This document shows, piece after piece, positions 11,501 through 60,425 of a stretch of DNA of 64,000 nt (the first letter of the stretch is position 1; each line of letters begins with the position of its first letter). The notes under the pieces were generated by a model. It was not told where the DNA came from and ran no database searches. It saw only the letters and a list, made by a program, of their open reading frames with translations. Made by a program: the position numbers and the translations under genes. The DNA is from Ylistrum balloti (taxonomy: Eukaryota). The stretch spans positions 1,364,001 through 1,428,000 of the forward strand of contig NW_026781965.1 of assembly GCF_031769215.1 (NCBI RefSeq), read 5' to 3'.

Positions 11501-14500
11501 GGAGCATTGAAAGGTGAGTAGCATATAAAATAGGATTAACCCTATATATATGTGTGTAAACATATAAAATCTACAGTTATCACACAGTAAATAACTGGCA
11601 TCACAGAGTAAATAAACCAGCTATCACACAGCAAATAACTGGTATCACACAATAAATAAACCAGTTATCACAGCAAATAAACCAGTTATCACACAGTAAA
11701 TAAACCAGTTATCACAGTGCAAATGAACCACTTAAATTATCACACAGCAAATAAACCAGTTATCAAAGAGTAAATAAACCAGTTGTACAGCTAATAAACC
11801 ACTTATCACACAACAAATAATCCAGTTATTATACAGTACTAGGTATCATACAGTACTAGGTATCACACAGCAAATAAACCATTCAAAGTGTTACAGCCCT
11901 TTTTAAACCTAACTGTTATGGACACACACAGTATTGTTGGACATTCATGTACAGATTTATTCAGTACCTATATGAATAGCAAAAACATACAAACATTGAT
12001 GGTTCTGGGTTGCGTGATAACCACAGGTCGATAGAAATACTGATACCTGAACTGCCTTGCAATGATTTATCACTGAACAAAATTAGGAAGTATCTATCCA
12101 GAAATTAGTGAATGCTGGCAATTATATTGACCTACTGACCCAACTATATTGATTTTCAGTTGAAATATAAGCCAATGTTATTTCACCATTATATTGTGCT
12201 TTAATAAGCCCACCTCCTGAATTTGAGTAAGAATTGGTATATTTTGGTCCCATTTGATTATTGCGAAGAAAATATGGTATACAATTTGTTAGTATGCAAT
12301 TGTTGAGTGATTTGATACCATTAGTAATAGGTTATGGTAAGCACATAGTTAATTAGTTCTTGCAGACATTAATGTCAAGTTTCAAGCCTGATATGGTGCT
12401 CCAACTAACATTTTGCATTTATTATGTAAACATTAGTTCTGGAAACATTTTTATTAATAGGTGGAAAGAAAACACCTCTGAAGAAAGCACAAACTCCAAA
12501 TCCTAAGGCGAAAACACCCAAGATGGAAGCAGCCGACCTGAAGACAAAAACTCCAGTTCTTAATCAGAATGGAAAACCTACTACAAAGCAACAAACTCCA
12601 CGTTCAAAAGTGAAAACTCCTGCTAAAGTAGAAACTTCATCCCTGAAGGCAAAAACTCCAAACCCAAACGTAAATACACCTACAGTGCAAACTCCAGCTC
12701 TGAAGACAAAAACACCAGCTAAAAAAACTCCTGCTAAAGTAGAAACTTCATCCCAGAAGGCAAAAACCCCAAACCCAAACGTAAATACACCTACAGTGCA
12801 AACTCCAGCTCTGAAGTCAAAAACACCAGCTAAAAAAACTCCTGCTAAAGTAGAAACTTCATCCCTGAAGGCAAAAACACCAGCTAAAAAAACTCCTGCT
12901 AAAGTGCAAACTCCAGTCCCTACCACAAATGCTCCTGCTAATGTAAAAACTCCAACATTGAAAGGCAAAACGAGTGCAAAAGTGCAAACCCCAATTTCAA
13001 AGACAAAAACACTGGCAACTAAAATGTCAACGAAAGGCAGGACCATGTCTTCAAAACAGAAAATGGAAGTGGAAGATTCTGATGAAAGTGAAGAAAGTGA
13101 TGCAGATATCGATTTGGAAAATATAGGTAAGCTTTGAGGGACACATAAATACATTTTCTCTGATTTTTTTTCTTTGTGAAAGCCAAACTTTGTACAAAGA
13201 ATATTTGGTAATTAGAAACAGCACTTCATTGAAATGAAATATTGTCTTTAAAAATCTACCAGAAGTAAAAAAATTGAAAAAATAAGAGACTTAACCTCCA
13301 TGTTAAGACCAGTTTGATGGTGGTGTCCAGTAGATGAAGGTCTTCCTGAATTGTAGTTCCTCTTTATGAGCAATTGATAAAAAGAAAAAGATTACTGCTA
13401 GACAAAAAATATGTCCTCATTCAAAGTGAATTTAAAATATCCTTCAAATTTATGTTTTGATATGTGTACAGTATAATTCATGACAAGGACATGTAACAGT
13501 AAGTATTTCTCAAGTTTTTGTTGAAAAAAGGAACAAATTTTCAACGAATAATCTTTAAGGATTTTTAAAAGATTAAATTCAGAATTGAAAAAAAAAAACA
13601 CACACACATTATGAGAGTTGTTTTTGCTGGATTTGTAGGATTTAAGTGATCTGTATGAATGAGTACTATGATACATTGACCTGAATGTAGAATGGTACTA
13701 TTTACTTCCCAACAAGACGATAAGTTGATGCCAAATGAAATTGATGTTTCTGCTCTGAATCCTGACTTTGACTAGAGATACCACAATAATTTTATTTTAT
13801 TACAGATTCTGAATGTGATAAGCAGAAGCATAACCTCAAAGTTTGAACTATTTAACAAAAGATTAAAAAGATAAAACATTCTAATTAGATGCATTCCTCC
13901 ATTTACTTTTTTAAAGGCAAAGCAAGACTAGAAGAAGACAATAGTGAAGAAGAGGAAGATGATATAGGTATGTACCACAGATATTAAAACCCTCTTATCT
14001 GTTAGTTTATATTAGTGTCCAATTACTTACCTCAACTAAACCTGAGGACTAAGGTAATCTAAGCACTATCTGTTGGTTCACAAAGGTTTTTTACTTTTGA
14101 CAACTCTTTCAATATACAATATCTACATACCTTCTGGTCTGACACTGGTATTCAACTCTCAGATGTGGGTCTAAAGGACTATTTGGCCTTATTTGGACAA
14201 TGTTGAAAATTTTACCCTTGATCTCTATAGAATGAGATATACATCCAGATATTGAGTGCATGTGTCTTGAAGCTCTAATTGATTAGCTCTACTTTGATTA
14301 TTGCTTTACAGTCTAATAAAACTGCAAGATATAAGAAATACTAGATATAAGTGTATCAATATTTTAATAGGAGTTTCTGAATATCTGCCTCAGCTTGAAA
14401 GTTCCACTTTGATAGTACTAAAATGAAATCGAAATGATAACCCACCTTTTATAGAGATTATATCCGTTCTGTCGGTATGAAGTAAACAGTATCGAGGTCC

Positions 14501-14607
14501 AATTGTTTCATTTTACAATATCGTTCTTTCAAATACAACATAATCAAGGATCAACTAATTTATAAAATTTCTCTTCAAATTAGACATGGAAGATGATGAC
14601 TCCCTCG

Positions 14608-14638
<31 letters not shown>

Positions 14639-17600
14639 AGAGGAGGAAGATGATGATGACGATGATGAAGAGGAGGAGGAAGAAGAAGATGATGATGAAA
14701 AAGAGAAAGATGAAAAGGAAGAGGACAAAGAAAACACAGGTGAAATTAACAGCATCTGCTCATTAAAAAAAAAAGAGCTAGATTGCAGCATATTCCATGG
14801 AAATAGAATGGATACCCAAATCTATAGGGTATTTCCTGAACATATAATAGATATATCCTGACAACGAATTGTCTGTTTTCCCATTAATAAAGTTGCTTTG
14901 TTGTCCATCTTTTCAATAATGCAAACATTTCTGTTCTGTATTAAAGTGTAAATATATGCCCAAGACGAGAGCAGTTAGCATATATCAGCATCGTGATGTA
15001 TCGTGATTAGAAAAGCAGGACAAGGATATTGCGGAAAATTTTAAGATTGGCGATATCGCCACAGACAAAAAGAAGTAAGGACGTGGCTTTTAGATGTATT
15101 AGATTTCTTAATATATTAAATATTATTTTGTCTTTCAGTGCAAGGAAATTCATCTATGAAAAAACAGGATGTGGAAGGGAATGGTAATGGTTTTTGTCAA
15201 ATTGTGATATCACAAAAACAGAAGTCTAAGTGTAAGGTTGTTGATATGTTAGATTTCAAGTCAGTTTGATAGAATTTAGCTGTCACAAATGTCTTCAAGA
15301 CTTAAATGTATCTTGATAGTGTGTTAAACAGAATCTTTTCTTCCCAGATTTCAACATTCTAAGACATGTTTTCTAAATCTCAGCAGAAAGTGAAACTTAA
15401 ATGATATTATGATAATTATCAGCACATCGTGACACGCATATATATATATATATTTTTGTACATTAACTAAATTCACAGTTTGCATTTGATCTGGTGCAAA
15501 CATTAGCTTTTGACCCCTCACTCCCAACAGTATAGATTGACAAGTCTAATTTGTAAGAAAATGTTTTAATTTGTTTTTCAGTTGGGACAAATATGTCTCT
15601 TAAGAAACAGGACATGGATTGGAAAGGTAAATTATTATAGATTGAAAATCTGCTGATACACTGTCATACGTTTTTCTACATGTAATGAATATTTCGCAAA
15701 GATATAAGTAAAAAGTAGAAAATAATCCAGCTCTGTCATAGGTTAAGAAATTGCTTTGTTACAAACTAGTTCTTGGAAATAACTTCTTTTTTTTTCATTT
15801 TCATTTCATTCGATATGTTAACTTTTCCATTACAGTATACTTTCTATGCAACTCATAATAAAATTTGGCTATTTTTAGAGGATCTTGACAATAGGTCATT
15901 GTTTGTGAGAGATTTCCCAACAAAAACAAAGGTGGAAGATCTAAAAATGTTGACAAAAGATGTTTTAGAAGTTTATCCTAAACCACATCTTGGCTGCAAA
16001 AAAGGAAGTTTAAAGTAAGTAAATTATGGTGTCACATATAAATATAACCCTATTACATCAGTGATATGATTGTGTGTGTGTGTGTGTGTGTGCGTGTGTG
16101 TTATGGTTTGCATGTAAATTGTTGTAGTCACAACCCGTCCCTTGCCATGCACTATTTTGAGCCTACAATGACCTCAAACTTGTTATTGTGGGTCAAGCAA
16201 TAGTGCTACATCAATACCGACTCTGATTTTGTAGACATTTTCATGGTGTTTACAAATGAAAGTCAGGTGACAGATGAATTATCGAATGAATTTTCTGATC
16301 CATGGCTGATTCTAAATAGATCATTGACACACAACTGAAAAGTTTCAGAATAAAAGAAGACCTGGGATATTTTATCAACAACTTTAATAATGAATTAATA
16401 CATGGTGATTCGATTCTGAAACATTTAGCATAAATCATAATTATAAATGTATTTGACATGAACACAATGCCATACAACACACCCTCCACACATACACAGT
16501 TGTATGGCACAGTTTTATTATAATGATATGATGAAATTACATCCTTGTACACACACATTGGATACGTATTATTTACAGAGATTGTATGGCACACAGACAT
16601 ATCTATATATGGATCAGTATTTACATATGTTTACCTCCAACATTTTCAGGAAACGAAAATTTTGTGTCAGCATGCCTATTGAAATTTATATAAGGTCATC
16701 AGAACATTTGTAAAAGAGAATTGCTTGAATCTGATGTCATGTGTCATGTTGTCAGTTTTGGTATAATAGAGATGCATCAGTATGTTGATGTGTGTGTGTG
16801 TTTGTGTGTGCGTGCGTGTGTGCGTGCGCGCGCGCACGTTGTAGTCACAGCCCGTCCCTTGCCATGCACTATTTTGAGCCTACAATGACCTCAAACTTGT
16901 TATTGTGGGTCAAGCAATAGTGCTACATCAATACCGACTCTGATTTTGTAGACATTTTCATAGTGTTTACAAATGAAAGTCAGGTGACATACATGTTATA
17001 TGTATATTTCAATTAGGGACATTGAGTAACATATACTCTGTTTTGGTGAAAAATAAGAAAATCCATTTGTTTAACAAAAATATAGTTTCAGACTGTTATA
17101 CAGATCATATGGTATAAAAGACGTGCACATTTTTATTAGGCAATTTAGATAGCTGATTATCTGAAAATGGTGCCTAGACTTATTAAATGGTTTGGATAAG
17201 CAGTTATCTGTATGATAATGTGATTGGATGAGGTGCAACTGATGAGCAGTTAGAATTTGAGTGGCTAATGCACAAAGGTGTGATGTATCTGGTCTCCTAT
17301 CCTGTCAGATAGGTTTACCATAATAACTAGTCAGTGGTGTAATTGTCTTTCTATCAAGACAATATGCAAATGGTAATTTTTGATGTTTAGCTAATGTAAA
17401 GCTTTGTGCTGACATTTCCATTTAAAGTACTGTGTCTTTCCTGAAACGGATGCATCAGTATGTTAATATGATCAAAGTTGCACTATTTTGAGCCTACAGT
17501 GACCTCAAACTTGTTATTGTGGGTCAAGCAATAGTGCTACATCAATACCGACTCTGATTTTGTAGACATTTTCATAGTGTTTACAAATGAAAGTCCGGTA

Positions 17601-20600
17601 ACAGATAGCTGGCATACTCCTTAGCGTACATACAAATTTTCAAGGAGGTACTAAATATTTTCTCTTCATCTGATGCTTCAGTACTTATTAAAATCGTTTT
17701 TCATGTTATGATGTTAATTAATCTTTGCTATTGTCACTTCATGATGTCAAGCAGATGAAAAGTAATAAAGGAAAAAATATGAATATATTTGAAACTTTTG
17801 CAAAACTGTCTGTAGAAAGATACCGCAATCTGTCTGTATTTTTGTGAATATTATTGTGGCATCATGTTGAGAACCAAAGTTAGTCATCTTACAAATATTT
17901 GGCGTTTACACTCTCTCACCACAGCTAAGTCTGTTCTGATAAAGAACAAGGTTTAGACATCTGGTCCTACAATCTTTTGCTTTAATGTATAGTTGTGTTG
18001 TAATGATGTATTGTGAAAGTTGACTGGTTTTCATTGTTAGTGATTGTACCCCACTGTTCCTCAGCTTAGGGGCAGTAAGGTGACAAATATAAGGGCAGTA
18101 AGGTGGCATATATAGGGGCAGTAAGGTGACAAATATAGGGGCAGTAAAGAGACACATATAGGGGCAGTAAGGTGACATATATAGGGACAGTATGGTGACA
18201 TATGTAGGGGCAGTATGGTGACATATATAGGGGCAGTAAGGTGACACATATCGGGGCAGTAAGGTGACATATATAAGGACAGTATGGTGACACATATCGG
18301 GGCAGTAAGGTGACATATATAAAGACATTATGGTGACATATATAGGGGCAGTAAGGTGACACATATAGGGGCAGTAAGGTGATATATATAAGGACATTAT
18401 GGTGACATATATAGGGGCAGTAAGGTGACATATATAGAGGCAGTATGGTGACATATTGTAGCAGTTCAAATCAGAAATGACCTTGGCCCTTATTTATAGT
18501 CACTAGACTAAATTGATTGAATAAAAATGTGGTAGAAACTGTTTCCATTTTGTTGATTATGTTTAGTCTGGAATATTGGCAAGATTATCAAACAATTTGT
18601 TTAAATGAATTTGAATTACCATAGCTCCACATTGAAAATCAGTTCAGTATAGGAGAAAGAAAATGAATGCCAAGTCAATGATACAGTCCTCTTTGGTCTC
18701 TTGTTTATGGTTAATTGTGTTGTAATGCACATGTACATGGAGGAAAATGCCTGTTTTGGTTGAATTTTCTTTTTCCAGATTCTATTAAAGTCACATTTCT
18801 TCTTTCAAACCTTAAATCAGCAGTGTGATTTCTGATCAAACTATTTCCATTTTTTTGAAATTACAGATGGGCCATTTTGCGGTTCAAGAATGAAGAAACT
18901 GCAATAAAAAACCATAAGTTGCTGAATGGAATGAAAATTGAGAATAACAAATTATATGCTGACTTTGTTGGCGCAAAGAGCAAGCATGCCACTAGAACAT
19001 ATAAAAATGGTAAATATTACATGTATGATTAAATTTCTTTCATATTATCAACATTGACTTGCTTCAAACTTGTAAACTATGTTTAAGTGAAAAAATGACA
19101 TGAACTTGTACATAAATTTCTGCGTATGTGTATCCTTGAGGCAAAACTTTTATTTATTGTTTTATAATTTATCAACATTTAACATGATAACAGTATACCT
19201 GTAGTGTTTACTTATCATTAATTAAAAATCAAATTGTATCCTTGAGGCAAAACCTTTTTTTGATTCATCTTATACAAATTTGCTTTAGCCATGAAAACAT
19301 TTCAATGAAGTGTAGATAATTTATGGAAATTTATTAGAGATATTCTACTTTGATATTAAGTATTCATAGTTATACATAGTTGTTGTGTGTTCTTCTATTC
19401 CAGATCCTGTGGATCCTTTATCGTTGTTTATAACTGGATTACCACTTACATGGAAAGAACTTGATCTCAGTAGATTATTTCCAAAAGCGAAATCTGTGCG
19501 TTTTCCTGCAACTAAAAAGCATAAGAAAGGAAAGCGAGATATAACAAATGCTGTAGGGTAAGTGGACATGTTAGTCCTGGAATTTCTATAAACACCATAC
19601 AATTCATGTTTGTAAACTTTAAAAACTACTCTTTAATAAATGTGTTAACTCTCTATGCCATGTGATACATTACTATATAGAATACCTTAGGTATATCGTG
19701 CATGTCGAAAGTTCTTGTTCTGATGAGCACATTATAAGTAATTAGATGGTGGGCAGTTCACATTACCCAGCATTAGAAGGCACTGTGTCTATTCTGAAAA
19801 AAGTTATCACTATTTTTGAGAGATACTTAATGGAACTTTCCTAAATTTCTTGTGAAAGTTCCCGTTGGCCCCTTCTTGTATCCTTTTCATTTTGAGTGTG
19901 ATCATAAAAACAAAATGGATGACAGGTGGCCATCTTGGATGTTGACTATGGAGATTGTTATTGCTGTATCTTGAGAAGCACAGAATGGATCATTCTCAAA
20001 TTTTGATTTGTAGCCTCCTCTTGATCTCTAGTTTTACTCTCTTGATTTTGAGACCATCTGAAAACCAAAATGGCCAAGAGATTGCCTTCTTACATTTTTC
20101 ACGATATTGATATCTTGAAGTATTGGAAGTATTTTTCTTTAATTTTTATTTTGTGGGTTTCACTTGGTCCCTAACGGAGGCGTATAAGGTCAATTTGGAA
20201 ATTTGATCAGGAAAACAAAAAAAGGTCCTAGAGGCCACTATCTTGGCTTCGAGTGTTTAAGATTATTATTGCTATTTCTTCAGAGATATTCTTGAATTTC
20301 ATATAAGGAGCGAAAAGTAGACAAGAACAGAAAAGAAATAACGAGTTTCAATTAATAAAGAAAAAATGGTGGATGCTGAGATCCCTCTGGGATCACTGTT
20401 TGTAAGACAAATCCATGATTACTGACTTAATGTTGGGATCACTGTTTGTAAGACAAATCCATGATTACTGACTAATTGTTGGGATCACTGTTTGTAAGAC
20501 AAATCCATGATTACTGACTAATTGTTGGGGTCACTGTTTGTAAGACAAATCCATGATTACTGACTTAATGTTAGGATCACTGTTTGTAAGACAAATCCAT

Positions 20601-22834
20601 GATTACTGACTTAATGTTGGGATCACTGTTTGTAAGACAAATCCATGATTACTGACTAATTGTTGGGGTCACTGTTTGTAAGACAAATCCATGATTACTG
20701 ACTTAATGTTTGGATCACTGTTTGTAAGACAAATCCATGATTACTGACTTAATGTTAGGATCACTGTTTGTAAGACAAATCCATGATTACTGACTAATTG
20801 TTGGGGTCACTGTTTGTAAGACAAATCCATGATTACTGACTTTTTGTAAGACAAATAATTGTTGGGATCACTGTTTGTAAGACAAATCCATGATTACTGA
20901 CTTAATGTTAGGATCACTGTTTGTAAGACAAATCCATGATTACTGACTAATTGTTGGGATCACTGTTTGTAAGACAAATCCATGATTACTGACTTAATGT
21001 TAGGATCACTGTTTGTAAGACAAATCCATGATTACTGACTTAATGTTAGGATCACTGTTTGTAAGACAAATCCATGATTACTGACTAATTGTTGGGATCA
21101 CTGTTTGTAAGACAAATCCATGATTACTGACTTAATGTTGGGATCACTGTTTGTAAGACAAATCCATGATTACTGACTAATTGTTGGGGTCACTGTTTGT
21201 AAGACAAATCCATGATTACTGACTTAATGTTGGTGTGATTGTGTTCCAGGTATGGATTTGCTGACTTTGCAAGTGAAGCTGAAGCTAAAGCTGCACACGA
21301 TAAAATGCAAGGAAAATCAGTAGAGGGTAAAACACTAGTGATTATGTATGCCTTCAAGAGAGATCCCAAGACTACCAATAAAAGGAACAAAGAGGTGGAC
21401 AGCAGCTTGGATGGTGAGAACAATAATCGCATAATAGTCTAGGGCCACATAGCACACTGACTTACGTTTAGTCAAGGACACTTTCTATAAATAGAATATT
21501 GATATTGTTACTTTCGATAGAAGGTGACATGTAATGGAGTTACTGGGACCTCTATCAGGCCTTTTACTTTTGACGTCAAGTGCCGACTTCGAATGAAACA
21601 CTGATTTCTGAACAGCATATTTATCATAAGATTTGTTTTCAGTCCTTAGACATGAGTATAATTGGTATAAGTAACTGTATTATGACTGGAGTAGAGGGAG
21701 CATTTAGGGGTTAAATCTATGATTATCATATAAACAAGTTTTAATCGCAATATTAGGTGTAATGGTAATACAATAATTTTACGAGATGTGATGCCTACTT
21801 ACTACTTAGCCTTCAACTACTGAGTTGGAGTATAACTTTTAAATCACACCTGAGTGCTGTAGCTTAGATATTTGAATGTAAATGAAGGAAACTGATGAGA
21901 TCAAACTTAGGTCGAATTTTTTAAGTTCAACTGGGTACTGCATTGATACAGGGTTAAATTATGTCTTCATATGTGGGATAGCAAGTGTGTTAAATGTTTA
22001 TATGAGAGACTCATACTGTTTGAAGTAGGTCAAACTTTCTGTATATTGAGGATATGTAAGTTGAAAAGCTTATTGGAGGGAACAAGAGTAATGAACTTGT
22101 CTATATCATATGAAATAACCTACTAATTACGCTGCAAAGTATGAATTTACTGACTTATGATCTTGATCCTCTGAATAGAAATAGGAATAGGGGTAGGGAA
22201 TAGGGAAAGGTCTCCAAATATACAAACATTGTTTAACATCCAAAAAAAAAAATCAAAATCCTGCTGATGGATTCAAAAATATGAATATCATAGTAATTCT
22301 GTAATACAGTCTGTAGCCTGCTTGCAAGTAAGTCAAATATCTCTTGTAATAAGCAACTTACAAAATCGTCAAGATTGAACTAAACACAATAAAATTGATG
22401 GTTTTTTGCATAACAGACTTGAGTATATTGGAACCAAACATCAGTAATGTGAATGCCATTTAGATTGGAGTGCAGTGACCAAATACAAGATATAAATTTA
22501 CTGTCACATACCTGAATGTATTGTAAGTAAGTTATATGAATTTTTCACCAGTTGAGGACTTATTTTTAACAGAAGTACTTTCTTTATTCCTCATTGAAAT
22601 TTCTCCTGAATAAATATTTTATGATTGATCCCAATTTATGAGTGTATGAATCTAGGTTATCATTCAAAGACGAGTTATTCTTGTTCTATACAGCTCCAGC
22701 TGCAAAGAAGGCTAAGTTATCAAAACAGGTAGAAAATGAAGATGATGATGACGACGACGACGATGATGATGATGATGATGATGGTCCAGCAGCCAAGAAA
22801 GCTAAGTTATCAACAAAGCAGGGAGAAAGCGATG
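8598..22834 (+). CDS. Divergent nucleolin-like RNA-binding protein (TP/TPAK repeat region, acidic tracts, 2 RRMs, acidic C-terminal repeats); 3' end lost in the N gap
   Basis: 14 phase-consistent exons: 8598-8627 (MVPKKNSRAK), 10437-10541, 10778-10819, 11483-11513, 12461-13126, 13917-13967, 14584-14739, 15139-15183, 15582-15626, 15879-16014, 18867-19009, 19404-19557, 21250-21413, 22694-22834+, about 636 codons. RRM1: SLFVRDF...KWAILRF...LYADFVGAKS. RRM2: SLFITGL...GYGFADFASE...VEGKTLVIMY. Confidence 0.8.
10080..10248 (-). mobile_element. tRNA-derived SINE with a conserved central domain
   Basis: The minus strand reads an A-box-like AGGCGCAGCAGT, a B box GGGTTCAATTCCTGG (10183-10197), then GGGTTTTCCCTGGGTACTCCACTTTCCTCC, which is the conserved core motif of V/Meta-type SINE superfamilies. 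Confidence 0.75.
11572..11880. repeat. Degenerate minisatellite of about 23 bp (tatcacacagtaaataaaccagt)
   Basis: About 13 diverged tandem units, read directly. Confidence 0.8.
16147..16275 (+). ncRNA. Box H/ACA snoRNA, SNORA50/SNORA76-like, copy 1
   Basis: Hairpin GCACTATT/AATAGTGC with a 12-bp upper stem, H box ACATCA, a second hairpin, and ACA 3 nt from the end. Both pockets lie 14 nt from their box. The 5' pocket pairs with 18S GCTTG-UC-TCAAA. Sense and intronic in a ribosome-biogenesis gene. Confidence 0.85.
16864..16992 (+). ncRNA. Box H/ACA snoRNA, SNORA50/SNORA76-like, copy 2
   Basis: Near-identical to copy 1, with one loop substitution; boxes and pockets intact. Confidence 0.85.
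17478..17606 (+). ncRNA. Box H/ACA snoRNA, SNORA50/SNORA76-like, copy 3
   Basis: Same 129-nt element. Differences are an A-U to G-U stem change, a loop base, the bulged base and the base before ACA; flanks have diverged. Confidence 0.85.
18066..18458. repeat. 23-bp minisatellite (ggggcagtaaggtgacatatata)
   Basis: About 17 tandem units; source of the SPYCPY ORFs in the track. Confidence 0.9.
19900..20260. mobile_element. Interspersed repeat fragment carrying ggccatcttg motifs
   Basis: Shares ggtggccatcttggat-type motifs with 30030-30560; family not identified. Confidence 0.4.
20389..21232. repeat. 46-bp tandem array (gggatcactgtttgtaagacaaatccatgattactgacttaatgtt)
   Basis: About 18 near-identical units ending 17 bp before the splice acceptor of the exon at 21250. 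Confidence 0.95.
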
Positions 22835-23006
22835 NNNNNNNNNNNNNNNNNNNNNNNNNNNNNNNNNNNNNNNNNNNNNNNNNNNNNNNNNNNNNNNNNN
22901 NNNNNNNNNNNNNNNNNNNNNNNNNNNNNNNNNNNNNNNNNNNNNNNNNNNNNNNNNNNNNNNNNNNNNNNNNNNNNNNNNNNNNNNNNNNNNNNNNNNN
23001 NNNNNG
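22835..23006. other. Assembly gap (172 N)
   Basis: A run of n between a low-complexity acidic coding exon and a satellite array. Confidence 1.
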
Positions 23007-23055: not shown

Positions 23056-25728
23056 GATTGTTGACAGAGTACAGGAAGGATATATATATGTATGGTAGAT
23101 CTGTTGACAGAGTACAGGAAGGATATATATATGTATGGTAGATCTGTTGTCAGAGTACAGGAAGGATATATGTATGTCTATTGGTAGATCTGTTGACAGA
23201 GTACAGGAAGGATATATATATGTCTATTGGTAGATCTGTTGACAGAGTACAGGAAGGATATATATATGTCTATTGGTAGATCTGTTGACAGAGTACAGGA
23301 AGGATATATATATGTCTATTGGTAGATCTGTTGACAGAGTACAGGAAGGATATATATATGTCTATTGGTAGATCTGTTGACAGAGTACAGGAAGGATATA
23401 TATATGTCTATTGGTAGATTGGTAGATATATATATATTGGTAGACAGAGTACAGGAAGGATATATATATATATGTCAGGAAGGATATATATATTGGTAGA
23501 TCTGTTGACAGAGTACAGGAAGGATATATATATGTCTATTGGTAGATCTGTTGACAGAGTACAGGAAGGATATATATATGTCAGGAAGGATATATATATT
23601 GGTAGATCTGTTGACAGAGTACAGGAAGGATATATGTATGTCTATTGGTAGATCTGTTGACAGAGTACAGGAAGGATATATATATGTCTATTGGTAGATC
23701 TGTTGACAGAGTACAGGAAGACAGAGTACAGGAAGGATATATATATGTCTATTGGTAGATCTGTTGTCAGAGTACAGGAAGGATATATATATGTCTATTG
23801 GTAGATCTGTTGACAGAGTACAGGAAGGATATATATATGTCTATTGGTAGATCTGTTGACAGAGTACAGGAAGGATATATATATGTATGGTAGATCTGTT
23901 GACAGAGTACAGGAAGGATATATATATGTCTATTGGTAGATCTGTTGTCAGAGTACAGGAAGGATATATATATGTATGGTAGATCTGTTGACAGAGTACA
24001 GGAAGGATATATATATGTCTATTGGTAGATCTGTTGACAGAGTACAGGAAGGATATATATATGTCTATTGGTAGATCTGTTGACAGAGTACAGGAAGGAT
24101 ATATATATGTCTATTGGTAGATCTGTTGACAGAGTACAGGAAGGATATATATATGTCTATTGGTAGATCTGTTGTCAGAGTACAGGAAGGATATATATAT
24201 GTCTATTGGTAGATCTGTTGACAGAGTACAGGAAGGATATATATATGTCTATTGGTAGATCTGTTGACAGAGTACAGGAAGGATATATATATGTATGGTA
24301 GATCTGTTGTCAGGGTACAGGAAGGATATATATATGTATGGTAGATCTGTTGACAGAGTACAGGAAGGATATATATATGTATGGTAGATCTGTTGTCAGA
24401 GTACAGGAAGGATATATATATGTATGGTAGATCTGTTGTCAGAGTACAGGAAGGATATATATATGTATGGTAGATCTGTTGACAGAGTACAGGAAGGATA
24501 TATATATGTATGGTAGATCTGTTGACAGAGTACAGGAAGGATATATATATGTATGGTAGATCTGTTGTCAGAGTACAGGAAGGATATATGTATGTCTATT
24601 GGTAGATCTGTTGACAGAGTACAGGAAGGATATATATATGTATGGTAGATCTGTTGACAGAGTACAGGAAGGATATATATATGTATGGTAGATCTGTTGT
24701 CAGAGTACAGGAAGGATATATGTATGTCTATTGGTAGATCTGTTGACAGAGTACAGGAAGGATATATATATGTCTATTGGTAGATCTGTTGTCAGAGTAC
24801 AGGAAGGATATATATATGTCTATTGGTAGATCTGTTGACAGAGTACAGGAAGGATATATATATGTATGGTAGATCTGTTGACAGAGTACAGGAAGGATAT
24901 ATGTATGTCTATTGGTAGATCTGTTGACAGAGTACAGGAAGGATATATATATGTATGGTAGATCTGTTGTCAGAGTACAGGAAGGATATATGTATGTCTA
25001 TTGGTAGATCTGTTGACAGAGTACAGGAAGGATATATATATGTATGGTAGATCTGTTGTCAGAGTACAGGAAGGATATATGTATGTCTATTGGTAGATCT
25101 GTTGACAGAGTACAGGAAGGATATATGTATGTCTATTGGTAGATCTGTTGTCAGAGTACAGGAAGGATATATATATGTCTATTGGTAGATCTGTTGACAG
25201 AGTACAGGAAGGATATATATATGTATGGTAGATCTGTTGTCAGAGTACAGGAAGGATATATATATGTCTATTGGTAGATCTGTTGACAGAGTACAGGAAG
25301 GATATATATATGTCTATTGGTAGATCTGTTGTCAGAGTACAGGAAGGATATATGTATGTCTATTGGTAGATCTGTTGACAGAGTACAGGAAGGATATATG
25401 TATGTCTATTGGTAGATCTGTTGACAGAGTACAGGAAGGATATATATATGTCTATTGGTAGATCTGTTGTCAGAGTACAGGAAGGATATATGTATATATG
25501 ACAGAGTACAGGAAGGATATATATATGTATGGTAGATCTGTTGTCAGAGTACAGGAAGGATATATATATGTCTATTGGTAGATCTGTTGACAGAGTACAG
25601 GAAGGATATATATATGTCTATTGGTAGATCTGTTGTCAGAGTACAGGAAGGATATATATATGTCTATTGGTAGATCTGTTGACAGAGTACAGGAAGAATA
25701 TATATATATGTCTATTGGTAGATCTGTT
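23056..25728. repeat. 46/43-bp satellite array (agatctgttgacagagtacaggaaggatatatatatgtctattggt)
   Basis: About 58-60 units over 2.7 kb with interspersed 43-bp and gtc/gac variants. Confidence 0.97.
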
Positions 25729-26505
25729 TCAGCTCACGATTTTATACTAATAACGATGCATTGTGTCATTATTCAGTTATTATGTAATAAAGTGAAGTGA
25801 TATCTATGGTCTGATTTGAAGAGTGTCAGGTTGATACCTTTTGAAGAATTGAATGAAGTTTGAACAAAAATTACATACAAGATATTTACCACCATTATGT
25901 CCCATCTGAAGTGAATTGCCATCCTGCAGCTATCATTCTACATAAGCTATCATTTCTTATTGTTAACATTTGTATCATTCTAGTACATTTTCAGTTCTGA
26001 TAATTTATAGATAAGAAAGAAAACTAATGAAATACTGATAATTGTCAGGAGATGAAGTACAGGTAATACATCACACACCATTAGACAGCAGCTAAGTGTT
26101 GTAATACTGAATAAGTGTCATTGTTTAGATTATGTGTTAATAATTGTCTTCATTTATTGATCAGGTGTCAGTTATTTAAAGCTCATTAACAATGGGTTAT
26201 GCATATTAGAAAATAATGATGTAAAAGGGATGTGTGTAGAGCCCCGTCATACTCCCTGAATGAAATGAGTTTTGTCAGTCATACAACTTTTGCCCATTAC
26301 TGTTTCTGGATATTAAGTGGGGAAACAAATTTGTATATCAGTCACCACTTTGTCATTTTTTTTGTAAACTGGTACATTATACACAAAATACTAAATGTGC
26401 CTCTGCTTTGTATAATATTTCATAAATTTCCTCTCTCTACTTGTTGTCTTTTTAGGTCAGAAAAAGGTTTTTTTTTATATAATTAAACTAAGAAGAGGAA
26501 ACTCT

Positions 26506-59982: not shown

Positions 59983-60425
59983 CATCATACAGCTATTTCG
60001 CCCTTTTAGAACTTGTCAGCGATGCTACATCATACAGCTATTTCGCCCTTCTAGACCTCGTCAGTGTTGCTACATCAGATAGCTATTTCGTCTCTCTAAA
60101 ACTCGTCAGTGATTCTACATCATGCAGCTACTTCGTCCTTCTAGAACTCGACAGTGTTGCTACATTATACGGTTATTTCATCTCTCTAGAACTCGTCTGT
60201 GATGCTAAATCATGCAGCTATTTCTTCCTTCTAGAATTCGTCAGTGTTGCTACATCAAGCAGCTGTTTTTTTCCTCTAGAACTCGTCTGTGATATCATAT
60301 CATGCAGCTATTTCGTCCTTCTAGTACTCGTTAGTGTTGTTTCATCACGTAGCTGTTTCTTTGCTCTAGAACATTTGTACATTTGTGCATCATGCAGCTC
60401 TTATGTCCCTCTAGAACTCGTCAAT
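59983..60425. repeat. 45-bp degenerate tandem repeat, about 10 copies
   Basis: Consensus catcatgcagctatttcgtccttctagaactcgtcagtgttgcta. Confidence 0.9.

What the first reader, a model, noticed from the sequence alone, without database searches (positions are those of the whole stretch)
16215..16275. Second guide pocket predicts pseudouridylation of 18S U101 instead of U105
Seen: hairpin 2 has lower stem ACC-GACT/AGTC-GGT, upper stem TTGTAGACA/TGTTTACAA and pocket strands CTGATT and ATGA, exactly 14 nt from ACA. These pair with 18S TCAT-[U-A]-AATCAG in the conserved GGCTCATTAAATCAGTT segment, placing the target at the equivalent of human U101. Established (from memory of snoRNA databases): human SNORA50/76 use this hairpin for Psi105. 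Inference: the guide has shifted about 4 nt along the same rRNA helix, predicting a lineage-specific rRNA modification. All three copies keep the shifted pocket.
Basis: partly seen in the sequence, partly recalled or inferred. Interest (0 to 1): 0.7.

Follow-up and report, generated by a model that had tools for sequence, protein, structure and literature searches.

The report
Scallop snoRNA with shifted 18S guide
A scallop intron carries three copies of a small guide RNA whose second guide pocket matches 18S ribosomal RNA four bases upstream of the site its vertebrate relatives modify; this predicts, but does not show, a pseudouridine that humans and yeast lack.

Summary
All three copies (16147-16275, 16864-16992, 17478-17606) keep them.

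Hairpin 1 carries the SNORA50-type guide for the 18S Psi34-equivalent. In three complete metazoan rDNA units from metagenomes, the hairpin-2 pocket pairs best with UCAU[UA]AAUCAG (6+4 Watson-Crick pairs). That site lies exactly 4 nt 5' of the one hit by the Rfam SNORA50 consensus pocket, the Psi105-equivalent. Shuffled pockets reach the same score in 0.05-0.3% of trials. Four resequencing runs from two studies hold the same array with unchanged pockets.

Several things remain unshown:
- The scallop's own rRNA was never seen.
- No RNA run holds the locus, so expression is unknown.
- No other mollusc could be compared, so "shifted" and "lineage-specific" are inferences.
- The free RNA's lowest-energy fold closes one pocket base on each side.
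- Vertebrates also guide Psi105 with ACA36, so "instead of U105" applies only to this snoRNA.

Verdict: an unannotated H/ACA snoRNA, a new member of a known kind, with a sound but untested target prediction. Interest is modest.

The parts
16147..16275 (+). H/ACA snoRNA copy 1 (hairpin-H-hairpin-ACA, about 129 nt)
   Evidence: Sub-threshold Rfam hits to SNORA46 (38.4 bits) and SNORA50 (34.7 bits). Fold z = -5.8.
16864..16992 (+). H/ACA snoRNA copy 2
   Evidence: Within the RNA it differs from copy 1 only at G16245-equivalent, which is A (G.U becomes A-U). The flanks are unalignable beyond about 27 nt upstream.
17478..17606 (+). H/ACA snoRNA copy 3
   Evidence: It has four internal changes. Three are in stems and all preserve pairing; one is in the bulge.
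16149..16207 (+). Hairpin 1: lower stem GCACUAU/AUAGUGC and pocket UUUGA / CAAGCA. CAAGCA starts 14 nt before the H box. It guides the 18S Psi34-equivalent.
   Evidence: It gives a single 5+6 hit, UAUGCUUG[UC]UCAAAGAU, in each of three rDNA units. The pocket letters match the SNORA50 consensus.
16208..16213 (+). H box ACAUCA (ANANNA)
   Evidence: invariant in the three copies.
16216..16222 (+). Hairpin 2 lower stem, 5' strand ACCGACU
16223..16228 (+). Hairpin 2 5' pocket strand CUGAUU; pairs with 18S AAUCAG
   Evidence: Invariant in the copies and in 4 DNA runs.
16229..16255 (+). Hairpin 2 upper stem (9 bp; 12 bp in the lowest-energy fold) and apical loop
   Evidence: Apical positions 16245-16247 vary between copies and runs.
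16256..16260 (+). Hairpin 2 3' pocket strand AUGA(A); AUGA pairs with 18S UCAU. The first base lies 14 nt before ACA.
   Evidence: Invariant.
16261..16268 (+). Hairpin 2 lower stem, 3' strand AGUC(A)GGU with bulged 16265
   Evidence: The bulge is A in the assembly, C in copy 3 and T in copy 1 of all four runs.
16270..16272 (+). ACA box
   Evidence: invariant.
16015..18866 (+). Host intron (GTAAGT ... ACAG). It splits the first RRM of a nucleolin-like gene and holds all three copies in sense orientation.
   Evidence: The reading frame continues across the junction (..KKGSLK|WAILRFKNEE..). RRM_1 hits fall on the downstream half-exons.

Best explanation
These are three functional copies of a box H/ACA snoRNA, made from one intron of a nucleolin-like gene. 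Once assembled with the dyskerin complex, each hairpin would hold a stretch of pre-18S rRNA in its internal loop. That places one unpaired uridine about 14 nt from the H or ACA box for conversion to pseudouridine.

Hairpin 1 is the SNORA50-type guide for the Psi34-equivalent. In hairpin 2, CUGAUU pairs with AAUCAG and AUGA pairs with UCAU. This leaves U-A unpaired, so the target is the uridine 4 nt 5' of the conserved Psi105 site (the human U101 equivalent).

Shown here: the anatomy, the conservation among the copies, and the uniqueness of the match on proxy rRNAs. Inferred: expression, the modification itself, the scallop's 18S sequence, and the evolutionary origin of the pocket.
For: - Canonical architecture and spacing.
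- Sub-threshold but repeated Rfam hits to H/ACA families on all copies.
- The copies are 97-99% identical inside 129 nt, while their flanks are at random-level identity (0.20-0.33).
- All three stem substitutions preserve pairing, and the fourth change is in a bulge.
- Four DNA runs from two studies hold the array with unchanged pockets.
- The U101-equivalent site ranks first in three complete metazoan rDNA units: score 23 against 19 or less, and -4.5 kcal/mol against -1.4 or worse.
- Shuffled pockets reach that score in 1-6 of 2000 trials.
- The controls behave as expected: hairpin 1 selects the Psi34 site and the SNORA50 consensus pocket selects the Psi105 site.
- 6+4 pairing is within the range accepted for vertebrate guides; the chicken ACA50 homologue is listed with 6+3 for 18S-105 (PMC2653536).
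Against: - The 3' arm has only 4 bp, and the whole duplex is AU-rich (3 G-C of 10).
- The lowest-energy fold closes U16228-A16256, which would have to open for the canonical 2-nt gap.
- No run on record as RNA holds the locus.
- The scallop's own 18S and 28S were never examined; the rDNA units used are unidentified metazoans, selected with a pattern that contains the target.
- No pseudouridine at this position is known to me in human or yeast, and the literature searches found none in any organism.
- A weaker second candidate exists (18S about position 214).
Confidence: 0.5

Rival explanations
1. The snoRNA is real and hairpin 1 works, but hairpin 2 is an orphan or relaxed pocket that modifies nothing. 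The 10-bp match to 18S would then be a remnant or a coincidence.
For: The arms are short and AU-rich, with a 4-bp 3' arm. The free RNA partly closes the pocket. Many H/ACA snoRNAs have one non-guiding hairpin (established knowledge). No Psi is known at this site.
Against: The pocket letters are invariant in three copies and four runs, while the bulge and the apical loop vary. A perfect 6+4 match is reached by only 0.05-0.3% of shuffled pockets, and it lies beside the family's usual target.
Confidence: 0.25
2. Hairpin 2 guides a different uridine. One candidate is the 18S site UUUAU[UA]GAUCA at about position 214 of invertebrate-type 18S. Others would be a site in an snRNA or another RNA not scanned here.
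For: That site is the runner-up in two of three rDNA units: 5+5 pairs with two G.U, at -1.0 kcal/mol. Its sequence is common among the 18S loci fetched. snRNAs and the scallop's own expansion segments could not be scanned.
Against: It is 3.5 kcal/mol weaker than the top site and absent in the third unit. Whether the scallop has this sequence is unknown.
Confidence: 0.15
3. The three copies are decaying or silent duplicates (snoRNA pseudogenes) that are not processed into stable RNA.
For: There is no RNA evidence. All copies lie far (more than 1.2 kb) from the 3' splice site, unlike single vertebrate intronic snoRNAs.
Against: Boxes and pockets are intact in all three, only pairing-preserving changes are seen, and the flanks have fully diverged. 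Multi-copy intronic arrays are the usual layout noted elsewhere in this genome and are known from flies and plants.
Confidence: 0.07
4. Hairpin 2 still guides the Psi105-equivalent through a non-canonical register.
For: None, beyond its family relationship with SNORA50 through hairpin 1.
Against: U105 lies inside the 6-bp duplex with CUGAUU. No register of the pocket leaves it unpaired, and the variant registers tested gave no hit there.
Confidence: 0.03

Closest known systems
SNORA50 / SNORA76 (ACA50 / ACA62; Rfam RF00407, clan CL00034); chicken GGgACA3
   Same: Two-hairpin H/ACA snoRNA of about 130 nt. Hairpin 1 has the same lower-stem letters (GCACU../..AGUGC) and the same pocket (UUUGA / CAAGCA) for 18S Psi34. 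It is intronic and in sense orientation. Its second hairpin addresses the same short 18S segment.
   Different: The hairpin-2 pocket is CUGAUU / AUGA rather than AUAACU / UUUAAA, which puts the target 4 nt further 5'. The Rfam score is 34.7 bits against a gathering score of 90. The host is a nucleolin-like gene, not CNOT1. There are three copies in one intron.
SNORA46 (ACA46; RF00404)
   Same: Best-scoring Rfam family (39.9 bits), with similar hairpin-1 stems and overall layout. In vertebrates it shares its host gene (CNOT1) with ACA50.
   Different: Its guide pocket differs (AUUUAAA / UUACGC in the consensus, for 18S-649/610). The scallop pocket letters match SNORA50, not SNORA46. The score is far below the gathering score of 80.
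Yeast snR44 and vertebrate ACA36 (other guides for the Psi105/Psi106 site)
   Same: They guide pseudouridylation in the same conserved 18S segment (PMC2653536; yeast numbering from established knowledge).
   Different: They target the Psi105-equivalent itself.
Multi-copy intronic snoRNA arrays of Drosophila and plants, and other arrays noted in this scallop genome
   Same: Several near-identical snoRNA copies lie in one intron of a housekeeping gene.
   Different: The layout is the same but the guide is different.

Membership tests
Box H/ACA snoRNA | Hairpin - hinge (H box ANANNA) - hairpin - ACA layout | tested here: met
   H box ACAUCA at 16208-16213 and ACA at 16270-16272, with two stable hairpins.
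Box H/ACA snoRNA | Internal loop (pseudouridylation pocket) whose top lies 14-16 nt from the H or ACA box | tested here: met
   The distance is 14 nt for both hairpins. The lowest-energy fold gives 13 nt for hairpin 2 if U16228-A16256 stays closed.
Box H/ACA snoRNA | Bipartite complementarity to rRNA that leaves U-N unpaired | tested here: met
   Hairpin 1 pairs 5+6 and hairpin 2 pairs 6+4 on three proxy metazoan rDNA units. The scallop's own rRNA was not available.
Box H/ACA snoRNA | ACA exactly 3 nt from the mature 3' end; a stable ~130-nt RNA | not testable with these tools
   No run on record as RNA holds the locus. Contigs cannot show RNA ends.
Box H/ACA snoRNA | Association with dyskerin/Cbf5, Nop10, Nhp2 and Gar1 | not testable with these tools
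   This needs an experiment.
Box H/ACA snoRNA | Conservation of boxes and pockets with pairing-preserving change in the stems | tested here: met
   Tested only among three paralogous copies and four runs. There are 3 of 3 pairing-preserving stem changes, and the pockets are invariant.
SNORA50 family (RF00407) | Score at or above Rfam's gathering threshold (90 bits) | tested here: not met
   34.7 and 34.4 bits.
SNORA50 family (RF00407) | 5' hairpin guides 18S Psi34 | tested here: met
   The pocket letters are identical to the consensus, and the site is the only hit in each rDNA unit.
SNORA50 family (RF00407) | 3' hairpin guides 18S Psi105 | tested here: not met
   The pocket selects the U 4 nt upstream. 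U105 is inside the guide duplex.
SNORA50 family (RF00407) | Orthology by synteny (CNOT1 intron in vertebrates) | tested here: not met
   The host here is a nucleolin-like RRM gene. The CNOT1 host comes from PMC2653536.

The most novel reading that the evidence does not exclude
A SNORA50-family guide whose second pocket has slid 4 nt along the same 18S segment, creating a pseudouridine at the U101-equivalent that is absent from human and yeast. This could have been allowed by a redundant guide (ACA36-like) that kept Psi105. It would be a clean natural example of a new rRNA modification site arising by guide sliding rather than by a new snoRNA.
Probability: 0.25. Interest if true: 0.45.

Novelty: new member of a known kind. 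Interest (0 to 1): 0.3.

Why it matters
If the predicted pseudouridine exists, it adds a mollusc-specific modification to a universally conserved 18S segment. It would also illustrate how guide RNAs move to neighbouring targets. Species-specific snoRNA targets are, however, routinely predicted in every new genome, and no mollusc has a published rRNA pseudouridine map to compare with. The practical value is a precise, cheaply testable prediction, plus the annotation of a snoRNA that Rfam's thresholds miss.

Tried and rejected
1. Rfam at gathering thresholds found nothing in the window. The family hits appear only in the E-value mode.

2. Orthologous host introns in other molluscs could not be reached:
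- An exon-level word search with 15773-16015 found nothing.
- The full HMMER search with the RRM exon 21239-21439 gave only generic multi-RRM proteins, not orthologues.

3. A 44-nt exact pattern of the snoRNA had no match in the metagenome contigs.

4. Sequencing runs: only five DNA-type holders were listed and none is on record as RNA, so expression could not be examined.

5. Literature searches found nothing useful on mollusc H/ACA snoRNAs, on a Psi at this 18S position, or on the target string. The Drosophila Psi-seq paper reports 228 18S sites and does not discriminate.

6. One Rfam call on ten loci failed internally and was repeated on three loci.

7. Alternative pocket registers (one more pair open, or the lowest-energy fold's closed pair) gave no hit in the 18S 97-108 segment and only weak hits elsewhere, so they were rejected.

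8. A Psi109 guide was considered, because CUGAUUU is complementary to the bases just 5' of U109. It was rejected because that strand lies on the 5' side of the pocket, not the 3' side.

9. On human sequence: the 18S search pattern was chosen to carry the invertebrate-type continuation. I took none of the fetched contigs for human, including three from gut metagenomes. Only L036, L048 and L056 were analysed in detail.

Full report
**What is there**

The sequence at 16147-16275 (+) has the layout of a box H/ACA snoRNA.

Hairpin 1:
- Lower stem GCACUAU/AUAGUGC (16149-16155 with 16201-16207).
- Pocket strands UUUGA and CAAGCA.
- An 8-11 bp upper stem.

The H box ACAUCA follows at 16208-16213.

| Element | Sequence | Coordinates |
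|---|---|---|
| Lower stem, 5' strand | ACCGACU | 16216-16222 |
| 5' pocket strand | CUGAUU | 16223-16228 |
| Upper stem, 5' strand | UUGUAGACA | 16229-16237 |
| Upper stem, 3' strand | UGUUUACAA | 16247-16255 |
| 3' pocket strand | AUGA(A) | 16256-16260 |
| Lower stem, 3' strand | AGUC(A)GGU, A16265 bulged | 16261-16268 |
| ACA box | ACA | 16270-16272 |

Fourteen bases (16256-16269) separate the top of the pocket from ACA. The same count separates CAAGCA from the H box in hairpin 1.

The whole RNA folds at -48 kcal/mol with z = -5.8, and hairpin 2 alone gives z = -4.0. No shuffle folds as well. One caveat: the lowest-energy fold adds a U16228-A16256 pair. The free RNA's loop is therefore CUGAU/UGAA, and that pair must open for the canonical arrangement.

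**Copies and constraint**

Exactly three copies exist in the window: 16147-16275, 16864-16992 and 17478-17606. All lie in sense orientation in one intron (16015-18866, GTAAGT...ACAG). This intron splits the first RRM of a nucleolin-like gene. The reading frame runs on across the junction, and the downstream half-exons hit Pfam RRM_1.

Inside the 129 nt the copies are 97-99% identical. The 100-nt flanks are at random-level identity, 0.20-0.33. The internal differences are:
- A to G at position 22 (A-U becomes G.U).
- G to A at 16245 (G.U becomes A-U).
- G to A at 16269 (G.U becomes A-U).
- A to C at the bulge, 16265.

So all three stem changes keep pairing, and no box or pocket letter changes.

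Contigs of four public DNA runs from two studies were laid on copy 1. They show the same array, including a joint to the next copy. Differences occur only at the bulge (A16265T in every run) and, in one run, at apical positions 16246/16247. The pocket strands are unchanged. This is the pattern expected of a functional snoRNA. Gene conversion among the copies could contribute to it.

**Family**

Rfam's gathering thresholds give nothing. In E-value mode all copies hit SNORA46 (35-40 bits; gathering score 80). Two copies also hit SNORA50 (34-35 bits; gathering score 90).

The alignment to SNORA50 is carried by hairpin 1, whose pocket letters (UUUGA, CAAGCA) equal the consensus. In hairpin 2 the consensus pocket is AUAACU/UUUAAA, whereas the scallop has CUGAUU/AUGA.

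The chicken snoRNA survey lists GGgACA3 (= ACA50/ACA62) with 18S-34 on the 5' hairpin and 18S-105 (6+3 nt) on the 3' hairpin. It is hosted in CNOT1 intron 16, and ACA36 is named as a further guide of 18S-105 (PMC2653536).

**Target test**

The scallop's rRNA is not in the window, so I searched metagenome contigs. It matched at least 95 contigs, which confirms the segment is real. Rfam delimited complete 18S-5.8S-28S units in L036, L048 and L056.

A register-fixed scan of every U in these rRNAs gave the following:

| Pocket tested | Top site | Pairs |
|---|---|---|
| Hairpin 1 | UAUGCUUG[UC]UCAAAGAU, the only hit with arms this long (L056 also gave a weak 3+4 hit) | 5+6 |
| SNORA50 consensus, hairpin 2 | UCAUUAAA[UC]AGUUAUGG | 6+5 |
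| Scallop hairpin 2 | GGCUCAU[UA]AAUCAGU | 6+4, all Watson-Crick |

The scallop site lies exactly 4 nt 5' of the SNORA50 consensus site in each unit.

By nearest-neighbour energy the scallop site scores -4.5 kcal/mol, against -1.4 or worse for any other site. Shuffling the ten pocket letters reached the observed score in 3, 6 and 1 of 2000 trials.

The runner-up is UUUAU[UA]GAUCA near 18S position 214, with 5+5 pairs including two G.U, at -1.0 kcal/mol. It is present in two of the three units and is common among the fetched loci.

The equivalence to 'human U101' rests on two things. One is the 4-nt offset from the Psi105-equivalent, which is a tool result. The other is my recollection of human numbering, which is consistent with the known sites 34, 36, 93, 105, 109 and 119.

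**Mechanism proposed**

The mechanism follows the established H/ACA model. The intron-derived RNA assembles with dyskerin, Nop10, Nhp2 and Gar1. Each pocket then clamps pre-18S rRNA on both sides of an unpaired U-N and isomerises the U. Hairpin 1 would make the Psi34-equivalent, and hairpin 2 the U101-equivalent.

Shown here: the anatomy, the constraint on the copies, and the uniqueness of the match. Inferred: expression, the modification itself, and that scallop 18S has the canonical segment. That segment is among the most conserved in eukaryotic 18S (established knowledge).

**What is not supported**

'Shifted' implies homology of hairpin 2 with the Psi105 guide. No sequence similarity beyond the general layout supports this, so replacement of the hairpin or an independent origin are equally open.

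'Lineage-specific' could not be tested. Exon-level protein searches did not retrieve host orthologues. The snoRNA itself has no match in the metagenome contigs.

No run on record as RNA holds the locus.

'Instead of U105' applies to this snoRNA only, since vertebrates have a redundant guide for that site.

Literature searches found no pseudouridine at this position and no description of mollusc H/ACA snoRNAs.

**Verdict**

This is a genuine, unannotated H/ACA snoRNA: SNORA50-like in hairpin 1 and different in hairpin 2. Its in-silico target prediction is specific and statistically sound but experimentally untested.

My estimates:
- About 0.9 that it is a real snoRNA.
- About 0.8 that hairpin 1 guides the Psi34-equivalent.
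- About 0.5 that hairpin 2 makes a pseudouridine at the U101-equivalent.

It is a new member of a known kind, and interest is modest. Earlier notes of this scan show that multi-copy intronic snoRNA arrays are common in this scallop genome. One note (s1-258807) records the same three copies on this window.

Noticed in passing
window 60035-60085 (-): Sub-threshold match to the type III hammerhead ribozyme model (RF00008): 30.8 bits against a gathering score of 48.5, E = 0.014, covering the full model length.
   Followed up: no
window 17998-18525: An array of more than 20 tandem 23-nt units lies in the same intron as the snoRNAs, downstream of copy 3.
   Followed up: no
window 20296-21000 and about 23065-25800: Long tandem arrays with a 46-nt period. 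The second spans about 2.7 kb just after an assembly gap at 22835-23005.
   Followed up: no
window 12430-13134 and 14586-14740 (+): The host gene's N-terminal exons encode TPAKK-type basic repeats and a long D/E run. This is the nucleolin-like arrangement ahead of the RRMs. A second acidic/KK-rich stretch at 22690-22834 suggests a further nucleolin-like gene or exon downstream.
   Followed up: partly
window 16265: The assembly has A at the hairpin-2 bulge of copy 1. The copy-1 contig of all four resequencing runs has T, and copy 3 has C, so three different bases occur at one unpaired position.
   Followed up: yes
window 16121-16146 and 16838-16863: Copies 1 and 2 share about 27 nt of upstream flank (GUUGUAGUCACA.CCCGUCCCUUGCC) preceded by (TG)n/(GC)n microsatellites. 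Copy 3 lacks it. This suggests the duplication unit was once longer than the snoRNA.
   Followed up: no
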